A stretch of DNA of 64,000 bases, taken from Botryllus schlosseri. Its lineage: Eukaryota. This document shows positions 6,396 to 49,800 of the stretch, in pieces. The notes under the pieces are model-generated. The model was not told the DNA's origin, made no database searches, and saw nothing but the letters and a program-made list of their open reading frames with translations. The stretch covers positions 18,972,001-19,036,000 of the forward strand of contig CM119372.1 in the NCBI GenBank assembly GCA_051294905.1, written 5' to 3'. The translations under genes were made by a program, and so were the position numbers. Numbering within the stretch: position 1 is the stretch's first letter; each line of letters begins with the position of its first letter.

Positions 6396-7080
6396 TCCAC
6401 TGTTCCAATTACTCTTCCCCCACGCGGAGGCTTAACGTGAATCTAGTTAATATTTCCTCGTCTCGACACAAAGATTGGCGTTCCGGCGTGCTGTGCGGCG
6501 ACGCAACTGAGCCCGGAGTGAGTCCCGGTGAGTGAGAGTTTTCTGTTCTCGGCAAGGGGTGGGAACCCTGCCCAGTTCCCAGTGTTTTGAATGTCTAAGC
6601 GAAGAAATCCAACTGAGCTGAGCACGGATAAACGACGAGAGTAACTGGTAGCCAGAGGTGGTCAGTAACGAAGTACTTTTACTTTTTCGAAGTACTCAAG
6701 TAGTTTTCCTCTACTTCTAGTACTAACTCAAGTAGATCTAATTTTCGCTACTTCTACTTCGTAATATTTTGTGATCTACTTACTTACTTTTCTCTATTTT
6801 CCGTTTGTCAGTAGAAGTAGTTCAATCCTCCAAGGAAGATAGTCTGATGAATTTCGGGGCTGTTTTCACGTAGTATTAACATTTAATTTTCATAAAAGTT
6901 GAGTAAAGCCCAGAATTTTCGTCGCGCTTAGCGCGCAGTGGATACGGATTTACCAGTATGATTTCACGAAAGTATCGGTGAATATATAATTTAGGTAGCG
7001 TGTTGGCGTGGTTCCGTTCACACTGCATTGTCGCCCTTCGCCCATATGAAATATGTCATCACAGTAATGGCTCATCACAA

Positions 7081-9182: not shown

Positions 9183-9334
9183 ATCACAACGTTCGAACCC
9201 GATGTTTCGCAATCTAGCATTTCCTTATCACATCGTAATCTAGCATGTCCATTGTCCAAAATGTCCATGGCGTGTCCTAATCTGGAAAAGTGGACTCTGA
9301 CTTTTTTTAGTTTTAGAGCTGTTTAGCATACCAC

Positions 9335-11056: not shown

Positions 11057-11338
11057 ATAGGCTTTTCGAAGTACAGAACTTCAATATTGCAGCAAACACA
11101 ACGTTCATATTGCCAAATTTATTCCACTGGAAGCTTTTCGACTGACTCTCTTCAGCGCTGAACCCCAGTAAATGTCTACTTGTCATTATTACGTCACAGC
11201 GACACAATTCTTTCTATATTTCGAACTTGGTTAACCTGATTTACTGGCGTTCACTGCTGAAGAGTTGAAGAGAGCCAGTCTAAACGATTCCAGCGGAGTA
11301 AATTTGGGAATATGAACGTATTGTTTTCTGCAATATTG
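11057..11338. mobile_element. Degenerate palindromic MITE inside the hAT
   Basis: Imperfect ~75-bp inverted arms (tcaatattgcag...ctcttca); flanked by ATATTTCA at 11049-11056 and 11339-11346; absent from the 48-49 kb sibling. Confidence 0.6.
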
Positions 11339-12084
11339 ATATTTCACTTTCAATTCCCAGTATCGAGTTCTAATTCATATCAGTTCTTTTGCCTCGACAG
11401 CATACACGTTGAAGTATAATAGTAAGTGTAGTAATGCCTTTAATTTCCGGAAATAAAACTACACAATTTGGCATTTTTACGGGCCACAATATTTTTTAAT
11501 AACGTTTACTCATCGCGCAGAGTGTGGGGGAGGGCTCCATACCATGATATTTCCTAAAACGCGCTGTTCGAGAAAACAGAGGATTAGTATCGCATTTTCA
11601 TATCAATACTATCGTTTTCATCCCATGATGCGGATGAATGCTTATGCTGTCGAAAATTGGATACCTCCTGGTATGCATCAATAAAATAGAGCTCGGCACC
11701 TTTCGCATTGTTCAATTTGCACCTTTTGACAATCCATGTGAACGAATTAGGATCGTTTTCACAACTACTTACTTACTTGAGTAGATTTAAAGTCGGTCAA
11801 TTCTACTTCTACTTCAAGTAGTTTTAGGTTGCTTATGGAAGAAGTAGACTACTTCTACTCGTACTTGAGTAGATTTTTTTCGTCGCTACTCCTACTTCTA
11901 CTTGAGTAGCTTTCCTGACTACTTTGACCACCTCTGCTGGTAGCCCGTCGCATCAATCAGTAGGCTACCCAAAAAGTAGCTCTTGGTTTCGAAAAGGTCG
12001 GTGACCCTAAATAGAGTTGAGCTTGATGTGATAAGCTTCCAGTCATCGACTTCTGACATTTCGTGGGTATGAACCCAAAGCGGA

Positions 12085-20401: not shown

Positions 20402-21184
20402 CAGTATTTCATAGTCTATAGTTGATCGTCGATTCCACCCATCTAGACTTTGTGACTGCCGCTGCGAATCGCCTCACATTTCAGGTCAGTTCAGCTTTCA
20501 TCGTTAGCGATAAAAGGAAGTGGAAAGTAATTGGAGAAGTCTTTTGCAATCAACAACACGCCTATACATCGAACATGCAAATAAGAGGCATACACACTGA
20601 ATTAAAAGTAGCAGAAGATAGAATAAAAAGGATCAGCGATGAAAAGGTACCAGTAGTCGAAATGGGTGCCGCGTGCCGGATCGTGGTCCAGTAATTTCGA
20701 GCGCAGACTAGTATTTATTTAGTAGAAACTGCTTGCATATTGAGTTGAATGCAGACACTTGACTTGACGTATTGCAGGCGGAATACTGCTTCACAGTCCT
20801 GGTCCGTCGTACTTGATAAAGTAGTGCGTTCCCTCGTAATTCGTATTCGAATCAATGCGTCCTTGATGATACCACTGGGAATCATTTGTATTGCACCGCA
20901 GTGACCATCGATGATCTCGTTACGAAATCGAACAAAATACGAGTAATGGGCATATTATAGCGTCTTTTTAGTCGGGCATTCGTTCTCACGGGGCCTCGGA
21001 GCGCTAGGGAAAGCGCAAATTCTTGTCGAACTTGAAATTTTTGAGGTCACCACTGCGTATCCGCCTTCACAGACTAGTTCTTCTGAATGGGTGCATTGCG
21101 CACTATCGGTTTTGACGAGTGTTTTTGTTTCGATCCGTCTACCTACGCAACGCATACTCGCTGCCGGAATGCAGTTTCTTCTCT

Positions 21185-21206
21185 CACGGATATCTAGATA
21201 TCCCTG
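21185..21206. mobile_element. 22-bp palindromic micro-element / transposon footprint
   Basis: cacggatatctagatatccctg flanked by perfect 8-bp TCTTCTCT (21177-21184, 21207-21214); the same 22-mer occurs at 49138-49159. Confidence 0.75.
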
Positions 21207-24200
21207 TCTTCTCTGCACACGTAATGAAGCGGAAAAAAGGACGGAGTCGCAGGAACAGTTGCCTAAACACCGGTCGCTGTTTGATCGCAGTTTTTACAAG
21301 CAGATCAACGCAGAGTGGCGAATTTAATATTTATGATGCTCGTAACTTCGATATATTGATACGTTGATGAGGGAGTTGTAAGCCGAGCTCGCGTTGCCGC
21401 CATCTCAAAAATTAGGCCACCGCTCCGTTCGGAAGCGTATTTTCCACAGTATATTCGCGCTTGACGGCGTTTTATTCCAGCACTTCGGCGCGCTTCGCGA
21501 AACGATTTACGAGTGCCATTTATCACGGCACTCGACGGACACTTCGCGAATGTGCGAAACGAAATAATTCATTCAGGTCACTGATGGTCGGTGTAATACC
21601 GCCGTCGTTGTGTGCGGCGGTTGAGTGCTCGACAGGGATAAGTTCAATTATTGTCACGGATTAACTCTTGATGCAGATAGATCGGTTAATATATAGCTTA
21701 CGCGAGTGGCTTTGATTTTGGCGTGAAATTGCGCGATGTCAGCGAGCCTCGCAGGATTTAACTCTTCCGTAACGATACCGACTGTCCTCAAAGCATGCGC
21801 GTAACAAAGCGTGAGTACGTCATGCAAACAAACTGGTAGTCTGCCGTAATTTCGAACTTGCTCGCTGAACTTGCTCGCTGTCCCAGTCGGTTAGTTCTGT
21901 CGCCTAGCGCCTAGATATCGACACAATGATGCGAGAACTCGAATCCGAATGGAGTATTAATTGTTACGATACGAATCGTAAAGTGGTCGTATCACAAAGC
22001 TACTCACGTTAGTGGAGATGACATTATTGTGAAGACGTGATCAACACACGGCATTGTCACGAAGTACAATGAAATACGCATGGTCGAAAAATACGAAATT
22101 ATCATTATGTGGTGAAAAACTGGCATTGTTTTCTTTGTGGTCGCACAAACTTTCCGAATCACTGAGGTAATCCAATTTGCTGATCCCTACCCATCAATAT
22201 ATCATATGTGGCCATAGATCTAGTTCAAGTCAACCCGAACGTTTGAATTAACTGTTGTTTGTGGTTGATTGGATGGAATTCCGAATGAGACCGCCCTGCC
22301 TCGTTCGCACGGTATTGGTACTATTTACATATTATCTGTCTCCTTTCAGTGGAGACATTCCCTGCTATTTATTGGTTCATAATTGCTGTTTACAGTGATC
22401 GGCTCCCCATTACATGCAGTTATGGGGCAATGAATCGGAAAATTTCGCTAGTGCCGCGAATGGGGACGAAACCGATGCAGATGTTCTAGCAGTAGCCTGT
22501 ATATTGAAGGCAATGTCATGCGCCGCGGTCGTGCATGAACGGGCAGGGAACAGAAGTGACTTCTGCTCAGTGTGCAAACCTCTTTCTTCAGATTGTGACG
22601 TCACCGTATAGCTCAGATGACGTGCATGTAGGAACGTGTGGGTTCTACCTGTGCTGCGTCCTGAGGCAGGTCAAAGTAGTCACGCTTGGAACTCGCGTGG
22701 AAGTAGGAGTAACGGCGTAAATATCTACAAGTACAAGCGGAATACCGATTTCCAAGTATGTAAAAAAGGAAGCATTCTTGGCATAGTTGAGCACTGTAGT
22801 ATTTTACTGACCACCGCTGGCTCTGGCACCATGGTTTACTCTGGGTCGCGAAAAACCTGTTGTAGGTAGCTCTACGTATTTTCATTGCAAGTGAGATGCC
22901 ATTATAAAGTATGGCGCTAACGCAGCGTTTGGAAAGGTACGGAAAGTTAGTATGAGAGGAGCGGGTTCAAATCGCAGTGTACAAATGATACGGTACGTAG
23001 TACTACTGATACGGTACGTAGTGCTACTGATATGGGGATGGATGTATATAACATACATATGTATAATATACATTGTATATTTTGGGTTTTATCTCTTGCA
23101 AAAGTCGTCTAATTTGAGGCGGATGAAAAATAACGATTATGCAGGGAATCGGAAGTTTTTCGAATGCCTGGTATGATTCACAACGTGAGAATTTGAATTG
23201 GAGGCTGGATATAAACTATTATGGAGCGCAGGCGGCAAGGCAGTTCGAAACCAGATTTTGTGTGAATTTCGAAATTCGAAGATTAGTGTATCCAGACCAC
23301 CGAGAAAGAATCGTAATATGTGTGGGGAATCAGAATCATTCTTGGCCGATTGACGAAGCGTTGCTGGGCGATCGGCAAACTTACTTGCTGCGAATTGTGA
23401 ACGGCGAGTGTCACAATAGCGAGTTATATAAAATCCCACCTGACCTCTACCCCGGTATAACATCACCCTAACCTTAACCGACACTTACGCTTACCCCGCC
23501 ACTATCTGCTATTTTGAGTGTATCTGTCCGGTGACGCTGGCTATTTAGCCGGAATGTCCTGTTGGTTACGTAACATTGTGTCTTGTGTGTCGCATTCTGC
23601 ATTGTGTGTCTTTCACTGGCTGTGGCAGTGTACTGAATAATCTGTAGACAACATTAAAGGATCAATGTCCATCATTGGATGCGTCGCCGCGCAAACACGC
23701 CCTAAGCCCAGAAGCAACATATTCTTCGTAATACTAGTTTTGGTCATGAGACAAGCTATAATTTGCACGCAAATTGGTCGCCACGACAGAGCGTGTTCAG
23801 CTGTTCAGTGACAGAAGATTCGGAAGTATAAGTTACATCTCGGCATCAATCACGGTGTTTCTCGTAGCATCAATTTCAACGATCGCATCATCAGATAAGC
23901 TCTGCGCTGTTCACTCTGCGACTCGAGAATGTCAAGTATTTGAAATGCGGTTTCGTGATATTTTTGGTGGGAAGGAGTTGAACAAATCATAACTGATTGC
24001 TCATAACTCATGCTGGTAGTGTGGTTCATGCGCTTAATTTCTGCGCACGGCTGATTTCTGTAATTTGATTTGTCGTAGTTACGCCGCCGTTGACAGCTTG
24101 GTATCGGTGTAATTAAACCTAGCAATCAGACGCGATCGAGCCGGGCTAGAGTGACCACTGTACAGAGTGCAGTAGTTAATATTAAAACTGATTCATCGAC

Positions 24201-46800: not shown

Positions 46801-49800
46801 GGTTTATCCATGTAGTTCCTGTGTATTATGGATGAAATTTCAGTCCACATTTGAGACTTGTTTATAAACCTAAATTCCATACCATGAGCGTGCTGTGCAA
46901 TCTCTTTGAATTTCACGTTTTCTCAATTCAATAGCACTGCATTGTGATCACAATGGCTATTGTGGTACTGCTACATAGGCTCGACTGTAGTTACTTCTCT
47001 AGACAGAGAATGACCGATTATGTTAAGGTCACATTATATTCGTTTATAGCCCCCACACTATGATTCCTACTTTTGTCCAACTTGAATTGTTGGATTTGTT
47101 GTTATTCCATTTAAGATGAATTCTTTGAGATATTGTAACTCATTATTAGGTGTTGCATCTCACAATCGAGAACGGGCGCACTGCTAGTAACGGAATCGGT
47201 GCAAATATTTGGCCAGGCCTAGCCTCCGAATAAATAACTGGCAGAATAAATTTTGTTTTCAAAGCAATTTTTGATTCCAAATCTATTTATAGAGTCAATC
47301 TTAGCGTCCATTCAATTTTGTTGGATTACCAAATCTGCCAGACACTTATAAGCTTTGAAAGTGTCCGAATTCTTCGCCTTGTAGGGCATTCATTTCCATC
47401 ACCTGTAACATTCCGGCCCTTCATTCATCTTATCGATGTCAAATTTTCCTACTCACGGTTCGTGGTTGTTTGGATAAAGTCACTAAAAGTTTCAACTTCA
47501 CCGGATTGGATTGAGTGCAATCGATCAACAGTGCCTTATCTGTTATCGCCGTATCCTATATGCTTGGCGATCATGAGACATGTTCGGAATTGTTAGCTGA
47601 AATTTTCACTGGAAAACGGTGCTGACAATGCAATGTAGACTAGATTGATTACGTTGCTCTGGGCTGAATGTCATCCTACTATAATGCCACCTTTCTATCA
47701 TATTAGGATGATTAGAGAGGCAATACTGTAAATTGGCATGGTATTGCGGGACTGTGGGTGAAATCCATATCATGAAGGATTTCCCAATTCTCCTATCCTG
47801 CTATCCTGACAGTATCTCAATGTTCACCGTGACTTTATTTTCACCTATTTTTAACAGGTACGGCCGGGTAAAGTCACTGAATCGTTCGTAGCGTCGGAAA
47901 TTACTTCGCATTTTCATGACCAGCAGGCTTTCTCAATTATACACTCTGATTATAAGAATTTAGATTTAATTGCTGGTTCCGTGGACGAAGCCAATACCTG
48001 GATCGCAGGTAAGGAGCGTTTTGTGAAGTTCTGCTTTATTGTGGATGCGAATATTGAAATGATCGTAGTCATGACCCAGCTTGAGCGATTGTGCTAGGCC
48101 AACTTGAAAGCAATATCGGAATAACTGCATGCTCTACTTTGTGAATGGGAATTTGTCATTTGACACTGACAAGGTGCTTCTGAACAGACACAGAATAAAG
48201 AGATAATACCGTAATGCCGACATCAGTGTCCTATTATTATGTAAAGATACTTACTAACAGAGGGTGTCAAAGTAGTCAAGAAAGCTACTCAAGTAGAAGT
48301 AGAAGTAGCGACGTAAAAATCTACTCAAGTATGAGTAGAAGTACTTCTTCCATAAGCAACCTAAAACTACTTGAAGTAGAAGTTGAATTGACTGACACTA
48401 AAAGTACTCAAGTAAGTAAGTAGTTGTGAAAACGATCCTAATTTGTTGACATGGATTGTATAAAGATGCAAATTGAGCTATGCGAAAGGTGACGAGATTG
48501 ATTCACATTGATGCATACCAGCAGGTATCCAATTTTCGATAGCATAAGCATTCGTCCACATCATGGGATGAAAATGATAGGATTGATATGGAAATGCGAT
48601 ACTTATCCTGTTTTCTCGGACAGCCCGTTTTAGAAAATAGCATGGTATAGCGCCATCCCCCATATTATAAGGTCCGTAGTTTAGTTGAGAGGATACGGTG
48701 TAAACACTTTGAGAGATTAGTAAACGTTGATAAAAAATATGGTGGATCGTAAAAATGCTATATTGTGTAGCTTTATTTCCGGAAATTAAAGGCATTACTA
48801 CACTTGCTTTTATGCTTCAACATGTATGTTATCCAGACAAAAGAACTGATATAAATTATAACTCAAAGTATATGATACTGGGAATTGAAAATGAAACATA
48901 AATACTAGTTCTAAAAGTGGAACACGTTTGGTGGTATGCTGAAACAGCTCTAAAACTAACAAAAAATGTCAGAGTCCACTTTCCCAGGTTAGGAAGCGCC
49001 ATGGACATGCTAAATTACGATATGACAAGTAAATGCTGGATTGCGAAACATCAGTTTCAAACGTTATGATTAGCCATATATAGGCTACTGCGATAAATTA
49101 TTTCATATGGGCGAAGGGCGACAATGTGGTGTGAACTCAGGGATATCTAGATATCCCTGTGTGAACGGAATCACGCCAACCTGCTACTTGATACTTTCGT
49201 GAAATAATACTGGTAAAGCCGTATCCACTGCGCGCGAAGCGCGATGAAAATTCTAGGCTTCACTCAACTTTTATGGAAATTAAATGTTGGTACTCCGTGA
49301 AAACAGCCCCGAAATTCCTCAGGCTATCTTCCTGATTGGAAGATAGAACTACTTCTACTTGACAAACTGAAAATAGCGAAAAGTAAGTAAGTAGATCACA
49401 AAATATTATGAAGTAGAAGTAGAAGTAGCAAAAATCAGATCTACTTGAGTAAGTAACAGAAGTAGAGGAAAACTACTTCAGTACTTCGAAAAAGTAGAAG
49501 TACTTCGTTACTGACCACCTCTGCTTACTGAATACTATCATGCAAGTAGATTTAGAAGAGGTGATGAATTGTTATGAAATTCAATTCCTCATTTTTTCAA
49601 GCCGATTTAATATGACAGACCTAATTTGGCATAATTCATAATATCTGCTGCCTTGTGCAGAGAATCCCAAAGCATGATTTGAACCGCAATGGTCGCTAGC
49701 TTGCCAACTTGTGCTATCGCCTTTTCTGTATTGCAAGTCGTAATCTGTAAGGACGTTTTGTTGGAAGTTGTATCATACCCATGGCGCCAGTTTTTCAGCT

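What the first reader, a model, noticed from the sequence alone, without database searches (positions are those of the whole stretch)
21177..21214. A 22-bp palindrome flanked by a perfect 8-bp TSD: micro-transposon or stereotyped hAT footprint
Seen: TCTTCTCT-[cacggatatctagatatccctg]-TCTTCTCT. The same 22-mer (perfect form CAGGGATATC-TA-GATATCCCTG) sits with a different 8-bp duplication at 49138. CAGGG...CCCTG ends and 8-bp TSDs are hAT hallmarks, yet 22 bp is far below usual MITE sizes. Inference: either two TIRs head-to-head move as a unit, or full elements repeatedly collapse through a CTAG microhomology within their TIRs, leaving an identical scar at independent loci.
Basis: partly seen in the sequence, partly recalled or inferred. 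Interest (0 to 1): 0.72.

Follow-up and report, generated by a model that had tools for sequence, protein, structure and literature searches.

The report
P-transposon excision scars, 8-bp duplications
The 22-bp palindrome boxed in by an 8-bp repeat is most likely the scar left when a P-type (not hAT) cut-and-paste transposon jumped out; it is one of about a thousand such scars in this animal genome, a known kind of repair product that is unusually easy to read here.

Summary
Both 22-bp palindromes sit where stated, flanked by 8/8 and 7/8 direct repeats.

Genome-wide counts:
- 132 perfect copies of the 22-mer.
- 947 short forms (20-50 bp) sharing the same 10-bp tips.
- About 155 copies of a 14-bp form.
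- Reversed-pattern controls gave 0-2 hits.

In 53 sampled short forms the flanks match 8/8 in 27 and at least 7/8 in 39. The offset control never exceeded 5/8.

The parents are not hAT. They are ~3.6-kb elements with ~32-bp inverted ends starting with the same 13 bases and perfect 8-bp duplications. Their ORFs carry the P-transposase RNaseH-N and GTP-binding domains.

The scars keep only about 13-19 bases of each end. The spectrum runs from 14 to 57 bp and often includes filler. It mirrors laboratory junctions from Drosophila P excision, where 17-nt overhangs are end-joined. The only two joins predicted with at least 4 nt of microhomology are the abundant 14-mer and 22-mer.

The scar-versus-micro-transposon choice is settled in favour of scars. 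The hAT label is wrong.

Copy 2 lies in a repeat with at least 880 copies, mostly empty at that site. This scan already reported sister P-type scars with 7-bp duplications elsewhere in this genome. Verdict: new member of a known kind, moderate interest.

The parts
21177..21184 (.). Left copy of the 8-bp target-site duplication TCTTCTCT (site 1)
   Evidence: identical to 21207-21214.
21185..21206 (.). 22-bp scar at site 1. It keeps 14 nt of each transposon end, overlapping at TCTAGA. Position 21187 is C in the reference but G in three other samples.
21207..21214 (.). Right copy of the duplication TCTTCTCT (site 1)
49130..49137 (.). Left copy of the duplication at site 2 (TGTGAACT, 7/8 match to the right copy)
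49138..49159 (.). 22-bp scar at site 2, a perfect palindrome
49160..49167 (.). Right copy of the duplication at site 2 (TGTGAACG)
48258..49523 (+). Copy of a ~1.27-kb interspersed host repeat that contains site 2. It is 84.5% identical to L027:580-1878, which carries a 28-bp scar at the same site.
7015..7022 (-). Empty site: a single TGTGAACG in a sibling copy of the same host repeat, with no scar and no duplication
   Evidence: about 95 of the first 100 genomic copies are empty in the same way.

Best explanation
Each 22-mer with its 8-bp duplication is an excision scar of a P-superfamily DNA transposon.

Shown here:
- Full-length parents of about 3.6 kb exist.
- They have ~32-bp inverted ends beginning CAGGGATATCTAGAAC and perfect 8-bp duplications.
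- Their ORFs carry P-transposase domains.
- About a thousand short remnants keep only the outer 13-19 nt of both ends between the same kind of duplication.

Inferred mechanism. As in the Drosophila P element, the transposase cuts one strand at the element tip and the other about 17-19 nt inside it. Both flanks of the donor site then keep identical 3' single-stranded tails made of terminal-repeat sequence. End-joining repair pairs the two tails at a self-complementary stretch, trims the flaps, fills in and ligates. Pairing at TCTAGA (nt 9-14) gives the 22-mer. Pairing at GATATC (nt 5-10) gives a 14-mer. Blunt or near-blunt joins and joins with templated filler give the 27- to 57-bp forms.

The scars have no function of their own. 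They are a fossil record of past excisions. Site 2 was later copied along with its host repeat.
For: Parents:
- End pairs bracket PF21787 hits. Examples are C12:20922690-20926273 (3584 bp), C15:145727-149296 and C14:24129894-24133469.
- PF21788 (GTP-binding insertion domain) hits lie in the same 627-629-aa frames, in the right order and above Pfam's cut-off.
- Of seven end pairs whose flanks were both listed, five have 8/8 duplications and two have 7/8.

Scars:
- 947 short forms with intact tips against 0 in the control.
- The duplication is exactly 8 bp.
- An empty paralogous site shows the scar plus one 8-mer is an insertion.

Boundary of retained sequence:
- Of 52 ends that reach the inner CGGGAT (nt 19-24), only one belongs to a short form.
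- None of the 25 printed forms that keep 19 nt continues with the parental G at nt 20.
- The inner bases of scars (AACT, AAACT, AAGT, ACTA) match the parental subfamilies.

Prediction: enumerating all self-pairings of a 17- or 19-nt tail gives only two products with at least 4 nt of microhomology, the 14-mer and the 22-mer. These occur at about 155 and 132 sites.

Precedent: the 17-nt staggered cut and 8-bp duplication of P elements are described in PMC7776569. Laboratory P excision junctions have the same architecture, with duplication, up to 17 nt, microhomology or templated filler, up to 17 nt, then duplication (PMC2895639).
Against: - No cleavage was observed. The stagger is inferred from scar lengths only, and retention of 18-19 subfamily-specific bases suggests a cut slightly longer than the fly's 17.
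- Two 40-bp forms with 19 nt or more on both sides could not be read, so 20-nt retention is not excluded.
- No locus was found with full, scar and empty alleles. Reads at site 1 showed only the scar.
- In two host repeats the same site carries 22-, 28- and 36-bp versions. Some forms therefore arise secondarily, by slippage or re-cutting, rather than as primary junctions.
- Several 14-mers have 9-bp rather than 8-bp duplications.
- Elements of 60-600 bp were not surveyed, so the gap between scars and internally deleted elements is not quantified.
- The parents' sequences could not be fetched, so the THAP domain and catalytic residues are unchecked.
Confidence: 0.78

Rival explanations
1. The remnants come from abortive gap repair, not direct joining of transposase-made tails. 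After excision, synthesis copies the sister chromatid inward from both ends. The nascent strands then anneal early at the palindromes in the terminal repeat.
For: In flies most recovered products after P excision are incomplete synthesis followed by end joining (PMC2895639). The 14-mer and 22-mer would arise equally well from nascent strands pairing at GATATC or TCTAGA.
Against: This model predicts a broad tail of longer retained ends. Retention instead stops before nt 20-24 in more than 99% of short forms. Blunt 18+18 and 19+18 joins without microhomology fit fixed-length tails better.
Confidence: 0.13
2. The 22-mer is a self-contained micro-transposon. Two 11-bp ends head to head are cut out and re-inserted by the transposase, making a new 8-bp duplication each time.
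For: There are 132 identical copies with different duplications. The same odd variant (G at position 14) recurs at three loci with different flanks.
Against: - The 22-mer is a minority among 947 forms of many lengths, and many of these were seen once in the rows read.
- The forms carry parental subfamily bases at nt 14-19, as expected for scars.
- Recurrent variants are equally explained by a variant parental end.
- The 22-mer lacks nt 15-32 of the terminal repeat.
- In Drosophila the transposase binding sites lie inside the repeats (PMC7776569).
- Identical copies in the host repeat spread with the repeat, not on their own.
Confidence: 0.04
3. The scars are hAT footprints, as the first reader proposed from the CAGGG tips and 8-bp duplications.
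For: The tips fit the loose hAT end consensus, and hAT elements also make 8-bp duplications (established knowledge). hAT elements are abundant in this genome according to earlier scan notes.
Against: Every long element found with these ends that overlaps a transposase hit carries P-type domains. hAT excision proceeds through hairpins on the flanking DNA and leaves no terminal-repeat sequence (established knowledge). A real hAT-like MITE nested in one scar has different ends.
Confidence: 0.03

Closest known systems
Drosophila P-element excision repair junctions (17-nt 3' tails joined by alternative end joining; PMC2895639, PMC7776569)
   Same: The architecture is identical: an 8-bp duplication, up to ~17-19 nt of each terminal repeat, junctions at microhomologies inside the tails or with templated filler, then the second copy of the duplication. 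The terminal repeats are about 31-32 bp in both.
   Different: These are natural scars carried in a germline genome assembly (site 1 is shared by other individuals), about a thousand of them, in a non-insect animal. The end sequence is unrelated. The tails contain two 6-bp palindromes, which make two products stereotyped. Retention reaches 18-19 nt, so the stagger may be slightly longer.
P-like elements and THAP9 of chordates (zebrafish Pdre2; Ciona P homologues, Kimbacher et al. 2009 as cited in PMC7776569)
   Same: A P-type transposase with 8-bp duplications, in a chordate lineage if the ascidian label from earlier scan notes holds.
   Different: Pdre2 has 13-bp terminal repeats with different sequence (PMC10983969). 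Neither of the two P-element papers read here (PMC7776569, PMC10983969) describes a genome-wide catalogue of scars. The Ciona paper itself could not be read.
P-type scars with 7-bp duplications found earlier by this scan in the same genome (s1-246863, s1-291514, s1-240488)
   Same: The same phenomenon and the same inferred cut of about 18 nt.
   Different: A different family: 8-bp duplications, different ends, and here the autonomous parents were located by coordinates.
hAT (Ac/Ds, hobo, Hermes) excision footprints
   Same: 8-bp duplications remain at the donor site.
   Different: hAT footprints are a few changed bases between the duplications and contain no terminal-repeat sequence. The parents here are not hAT.
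MITEs and very short non-autonomous elements
   Same: Short, inverted ends, flanked by duplications, high copy number.
   Different: MITE copies share internal sequence and amplify by transposition. These forms share only the tips, vary continuously in length, and are bounded by the cut position.

Membership tests
P superfamily (parent elements) | Transposase with a TNP-like RNase H domain interrupted by a GTP-binding insertion domain | tested here: met
   PF21787 and PF21788 hits lie in order, above the curated cut-offs, in the same 627-629-aa frames inside end-bounded elements on C12, C14 (two) and partial ones on C2 and C16. A 961-aa frame lies at C9:893706.
P superfamily (parent elements) | N-terminal THAP DNA-binding domain | not tested
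P superfamily (parent elements) | Terminal inverted repeats with 7-8-bp target-site duplications | tested here: met
   The two ends of C12:20922690-20926273 agree at 31 of 32 positions. Five of seven end pairs have 8/8 duplications and two have 7/8.
P superfamily (parent elements) | Long staggered donor cleavage (17 nt in Drosophila) | tested here: inconclusive
   Scars keep at most about 19 nt per side, and only 1 of 52 ends reaching nt 24 is a short form. This fits a cut of about 17-19 nt but is indirect.
P-element excision scar (the finding itself) | Both copies of the duplication retained, with partial terminal repeats of both ends between them | tested here: met
   empty paralogous site.
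P-element excision scar (the finding itself) | A spectrum of junctions using microhomology in the tails or templated filler | tested here: met
   Lengths run from 14 to 57 bp. The predicted 6-nt microhomology products are the two commonest perfect forms.
hAT superfamily | hAT transposase in the autonomous element | tested here: not met
   Elements with these ends carry P-type domains. hAT domains were not searched for separately.
hAT superfamily | 8-bp duplication and YARNG-type tips | tested here: met
   This feature is shared with P elements, so it does not discriminate.
MITE / micro-transposon | Copies related by descent from a mobile short element, homogeneous in length and internal sequence | tested here: not met
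   There is a continuum of lengths, and perfect 22-mers are 132 of 947 short forms.

The most novel reading that the evidence does not exclude
Some of these 22-bp units may themselves be mobile, or may be re-cut by the transposase. That would make them the smallest transposable DNA known. It would also explain why one site in two different host repeats carries 22-, 28- and 36-bp versions. A milder version is that the palindromic scars are preferred landing sites that are hit again and again.
Probability: 0.05. Interest if true: 0.8.

Novelty: new member of a known kind. Interest (0 to 1): 0.4.

Why it matters
Biochemical evidence for the unusual long staggered cut of P transposases comes from the fruit-fly enzyme. 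Here about a thousand natural scars from several subfamilies record where a distant animal's P transposase cut and how the germline repaired the break.

This gives a free in vivo data set on two things. One is cleavage geometry, about 17-19 nt. The other is microhomology choice in end joining.

It also matters for annotation. Such palindromes with duplications should be read as footprints of past P activity, not as hAT elements or micro-MITEs. Counting them gives a minimum number of historical excisions, more than 1,000 scars against roughly 35 long copies.

Tried and rejected
1. Parent hunt among ends followed by C or G at nt 14. I fetched 16 loci and found no transposase. The 645-bp candidate (L052) turned out to be an unrelated hAT-like MITE nested in a 31-bp scar, and the others are one-sided or degenerate.
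2. L062, an intact 799-aa P transposase copy, has no such ends and belongs to another P family.
From then on, matched letters were also withheld. I did not try to get round this, so the parents are known by coordinates, end sequences and domain hits only.
4. Reads at site 1 were laid to look for empty or full alleles. Only the scar was seen, and the runs are contigs, so absence proves nothing.
5. A strict scan of the window for other palindrome-plus-duplication units found nothing beyond the two sites and one probable chance hit.
6. Open frames spanning site 1 have no Pfam match, so there is no evidence the 30-bp insertion lies in coding sequence.
7. The idea that the 36-, 30- and 42-bp forms reveal a longer hairpin-like terminal repeat was dropped once the real repeats were seen. 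The 36-mer is the 28-mer plus an 8-bp tandem duplication, and the 30-mer is the 22-mer plus 8 bp.

Full report
**Observation.** The sequence is as described.
- Window 21177-21214 reads TCTTCTCT, a 22-mer, TCTTCTCT. The 22-mer differs from the perfect palindrome by C for G at its third base.
- Window 49130-49167 reads TGTGAACT, the perfect 22-mer, TGTGAACG.
- The 16-bp core occurs twice in the window against 0.02 expected.

**Genome-wide picture.** The window is C2:18972001-19036000 of a 495-Mb assembly.

| Pattern | Sites | Reversed control |
|---|---|---|
| 16-bp core, up to 1 mismatch | 616 | 2 |
| Perfect 22-mer | 132 | 0 |
| 10-bp tip, 0-30 nt, inverted 10-bp tip | 947 | 0 |
| 14-bp form, pattern hits (3 in 4 of all sites pass the last-letter filter) | 117 | 0-1 |

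- Lengths of 22, 27, 28, 30-32, 34-36, 39, 42 and 44 bp and more were seen in the first 50 listed sites.
- The 14-bp form corresponds to about 155 sites after correcting for the filter.
- Among 53 short forms in fetched loci and the window, 27 have perfect 8/8 flanking repeats and 39 have at least 7/8. The offset control never exceeds 5/8, and only one repeat extends to 9 bp. The duplication is therefore real and 8 bp long.

**The insertion nature is shown directly.** Site 2 lies in a ~1.27-kb interspersed repeat (window 48258-49523). A sibling copy in the same window has the undisturbed target, a single TGTGAACG at 7015-7022 on the minus strand, with no scar. Genome-wide this repeat has at least 880 copies with the flanking anchors I used. 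About 95 of the first 100 listed are empty in the same way.

**The parents.** A first hunt led nowhere. Listing what follows the 13-bp tip then showed recurrent long continuations. A pattern requiring the inner motif CGGGAT at nt 19-24 gave 52 ends.
- Many ends pair up at 3.2-3.9 kb. Examples are C12:20922690-20926273 (3584 bp), C15:145727-149296 (3570 bp), C14:24129894-24133469 (3576 bp), C4:7912733-7916494 and C4:14604880-14608555. Larger copies of 7.5, 8.4 and 17.2 kb also exist.
- The two ends of the C12 copy agree at 31 of 32 positions and then diverge, so the terminal repeat is about 32 bp.
- Flanks of seven pairs give five 8/8 duplications and two 7/8.
- Inside these elements lie hits to PF21787 (TNP-like RNase H N-terminal domain). 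In the same 627-629-aa open frames, just downstream, lie hits to PF21788 (the GTP-binding insertion domain peculiar to P transposases). Both are above Pfam's cut-offs.
- Single ends on C1, C2, C3, C8, C12 and C16 lie 1.5-2 kb from further PF21787 hits.
- The family is therefore P-type, not hAT.
- Subfamilies differ at nt 14-19 of the repeat (AACTTC, AACTAC, AACTCC, AAACTT, AAGCTC, AAGTCC). A non-autonomous group has ACTAC.

**Anatomy of the scars.**
- Nearly all short forms keep the 13-bp tip on both sides, plus a variable middle.
- That middle is made of the next bases of the parental repeats (AACT, AAACT, AAGT, ACTA). Sometimes a few filler bases or short local copies are added.
- Examples are 18+18 and 18+17 joins of the AAACT subfamily, 19+18 joins of the AACTAC subfamily, and 17+1+17 of the ACTAC group.
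- Retention stops there. Only one of the 52 ends that reach nt 24 belongs to a short form. None of the 25 readable forms that keep 19 nt goes on with the parental G at nt 20.
- This sharp limit, together with blunt joins of near-full tails, is what a fixed staggered cut predicts. Random internal deletion does not predict it.

**Why a 22-mer.** I enumerated every way two identical 17- or 19-nt tails can pair. Only two products have 4 nt or more of microhomology, and both have 6 nt.
- Pairing at GATATC gives the 14-mer.
- Pairing at TCTAGA gives exactly the 22-mer.
- These occur at about 155 and 132 sites, and no other perfect form was counted exactly.

**Comparison with what is known.**
- The P element has 31-bp terminal repeats, 8-bp duplications and an unusually long 17-nt staggered cut (PMC7776569).
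- After P excision in flies, junction tables show the 8-bp duplication, up to 17 nt of each repeat, microhomologies within the tails or templated insertions, and the second duplication (PMC2895639). The architecture here is the same.
- P-type genes are known from zebrafish (13-bp repeats, 8-bp duplications; PMC10983969) and Ciona (cited in PMC7776569).
- Earlier notes of this scan call this genome an ascidian. They report sister scars with 7-bp duplications and an inferred cut of about 18 nt. I did not verify the organism. My result for the 8-bp family agrees with those notes and adds located parents.

**The two window copies.**
- Site 1 lies in unique sequence. Contigs from three other samples, from two other studies, carry the scar with G at 21187. 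It is therefore an older, shared scar, and the reference C is a later variant. No empty or full allele was seen.
- Site 2 is not an independent event in the strict sense. C2:16595402 has the same repeat, the same scar and the same 7/8 flanks.
- Other copies of the host repeat hold 28- or 36-bp versions at the same site.
- All eight filled copies I could read have the TG variant at a nearby CpG, while more than half of the empty copies keep CG. This favours one old insertion and excision in a sub-lineage of the repeat, followed by amplification and slippage: 28 to 36 by an 8-bp tandem copy, 28 to 22 by loss of 6 bp. Recurrent hits on a hotspot are not excluded.
- A second host repeat (duplication ATTCTCGG) shows the same trio.

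**Rivals.**
- Abortive gap repair would also give the 14- and 22-mers, but it predicts a tail of longer retained ends that is not seen.
- A self-mobile 22-bp unit is not needed and fits the spectrum badly.
- hAT is contradicted by the parents.

**Limits.**
- No cleavage was observed.
- Elements of 60-600 bp were not surveyed.
- Several 14-mers have 9-bp duplications that I cannot explain.

**Verdict.** It is a new member of a known kind. Interest is moderate, mainly as a natural record of P-transposase cleavage and end-joining choices outside insects.

Noticed in passing
window 48258-49523; also 6653-7066, 9183-9334, 11334-11942: A ~1.27-kb interspersed repeat with at least 880 genomic copies (exact anchors). 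Most copies are empty at the TGTGAACG site, and a minority carry 12-, 22-, 28- or 36-bp scars there. Its class was not determined.
   Followed up: partly
genome, e.g. C2:12702717, C3:12850241, C4:16939776, C5:13227927, C6:13401068: Several 14-bp scars are flanked by 9-bp rather than 8-bp duplications, although the long parents and the 22- to 44-bp forms show 8 bp. Unexplained; possibly a related family.
   Followed up: no
L052:201-845 (C4:21342288 onward): A hAT-like MITE with CAGAGATGAGC ends and duplication ATATCTAG is nested inside a 31-bp scar. The 30- and 36-bp scar forms equal the 22- and 28-mers plus an 8-bp tandem copy. This could be the clean footprint of such a second visitor, or repair slippage.
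   Followed up: partly
window 21204-21224: In one other sample (run X10) a contig carries a 21-bp tandem duplication spanning the last 3 bases of the scar, the right-hand duplication and 10 bases of flank.
   Followed up: no
L062:3485-5881 (C2:28706484-28708880): An intact 799-aa P transposase with all four Pfam P-transposase domains, from a different and more abundant P family lacking these ends. The genome has at least 150 PF21787 hits, many in open frames of 790-800 aa, so P elements look recently active.
   Followed up: partly
L016:1460-1545 and L018, L020, L021, L035, L037: A 28-bp scar variant with duplication TCGCCCAA recurs with identical flanks, so it was amplified inside another repeat. 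L016 shows three TCGCCCAA copies with an 8-bp tip fragment between the first two, suggesting two successive visits.
   Followed up: no
C12:22450738-22467991: A 17.2-kb stretch bounded by the same P-type ends with a perfect 8-bp duplication (GCTTTGAC). It is probably a copy swollen by nested insertions.
   Followed up: no
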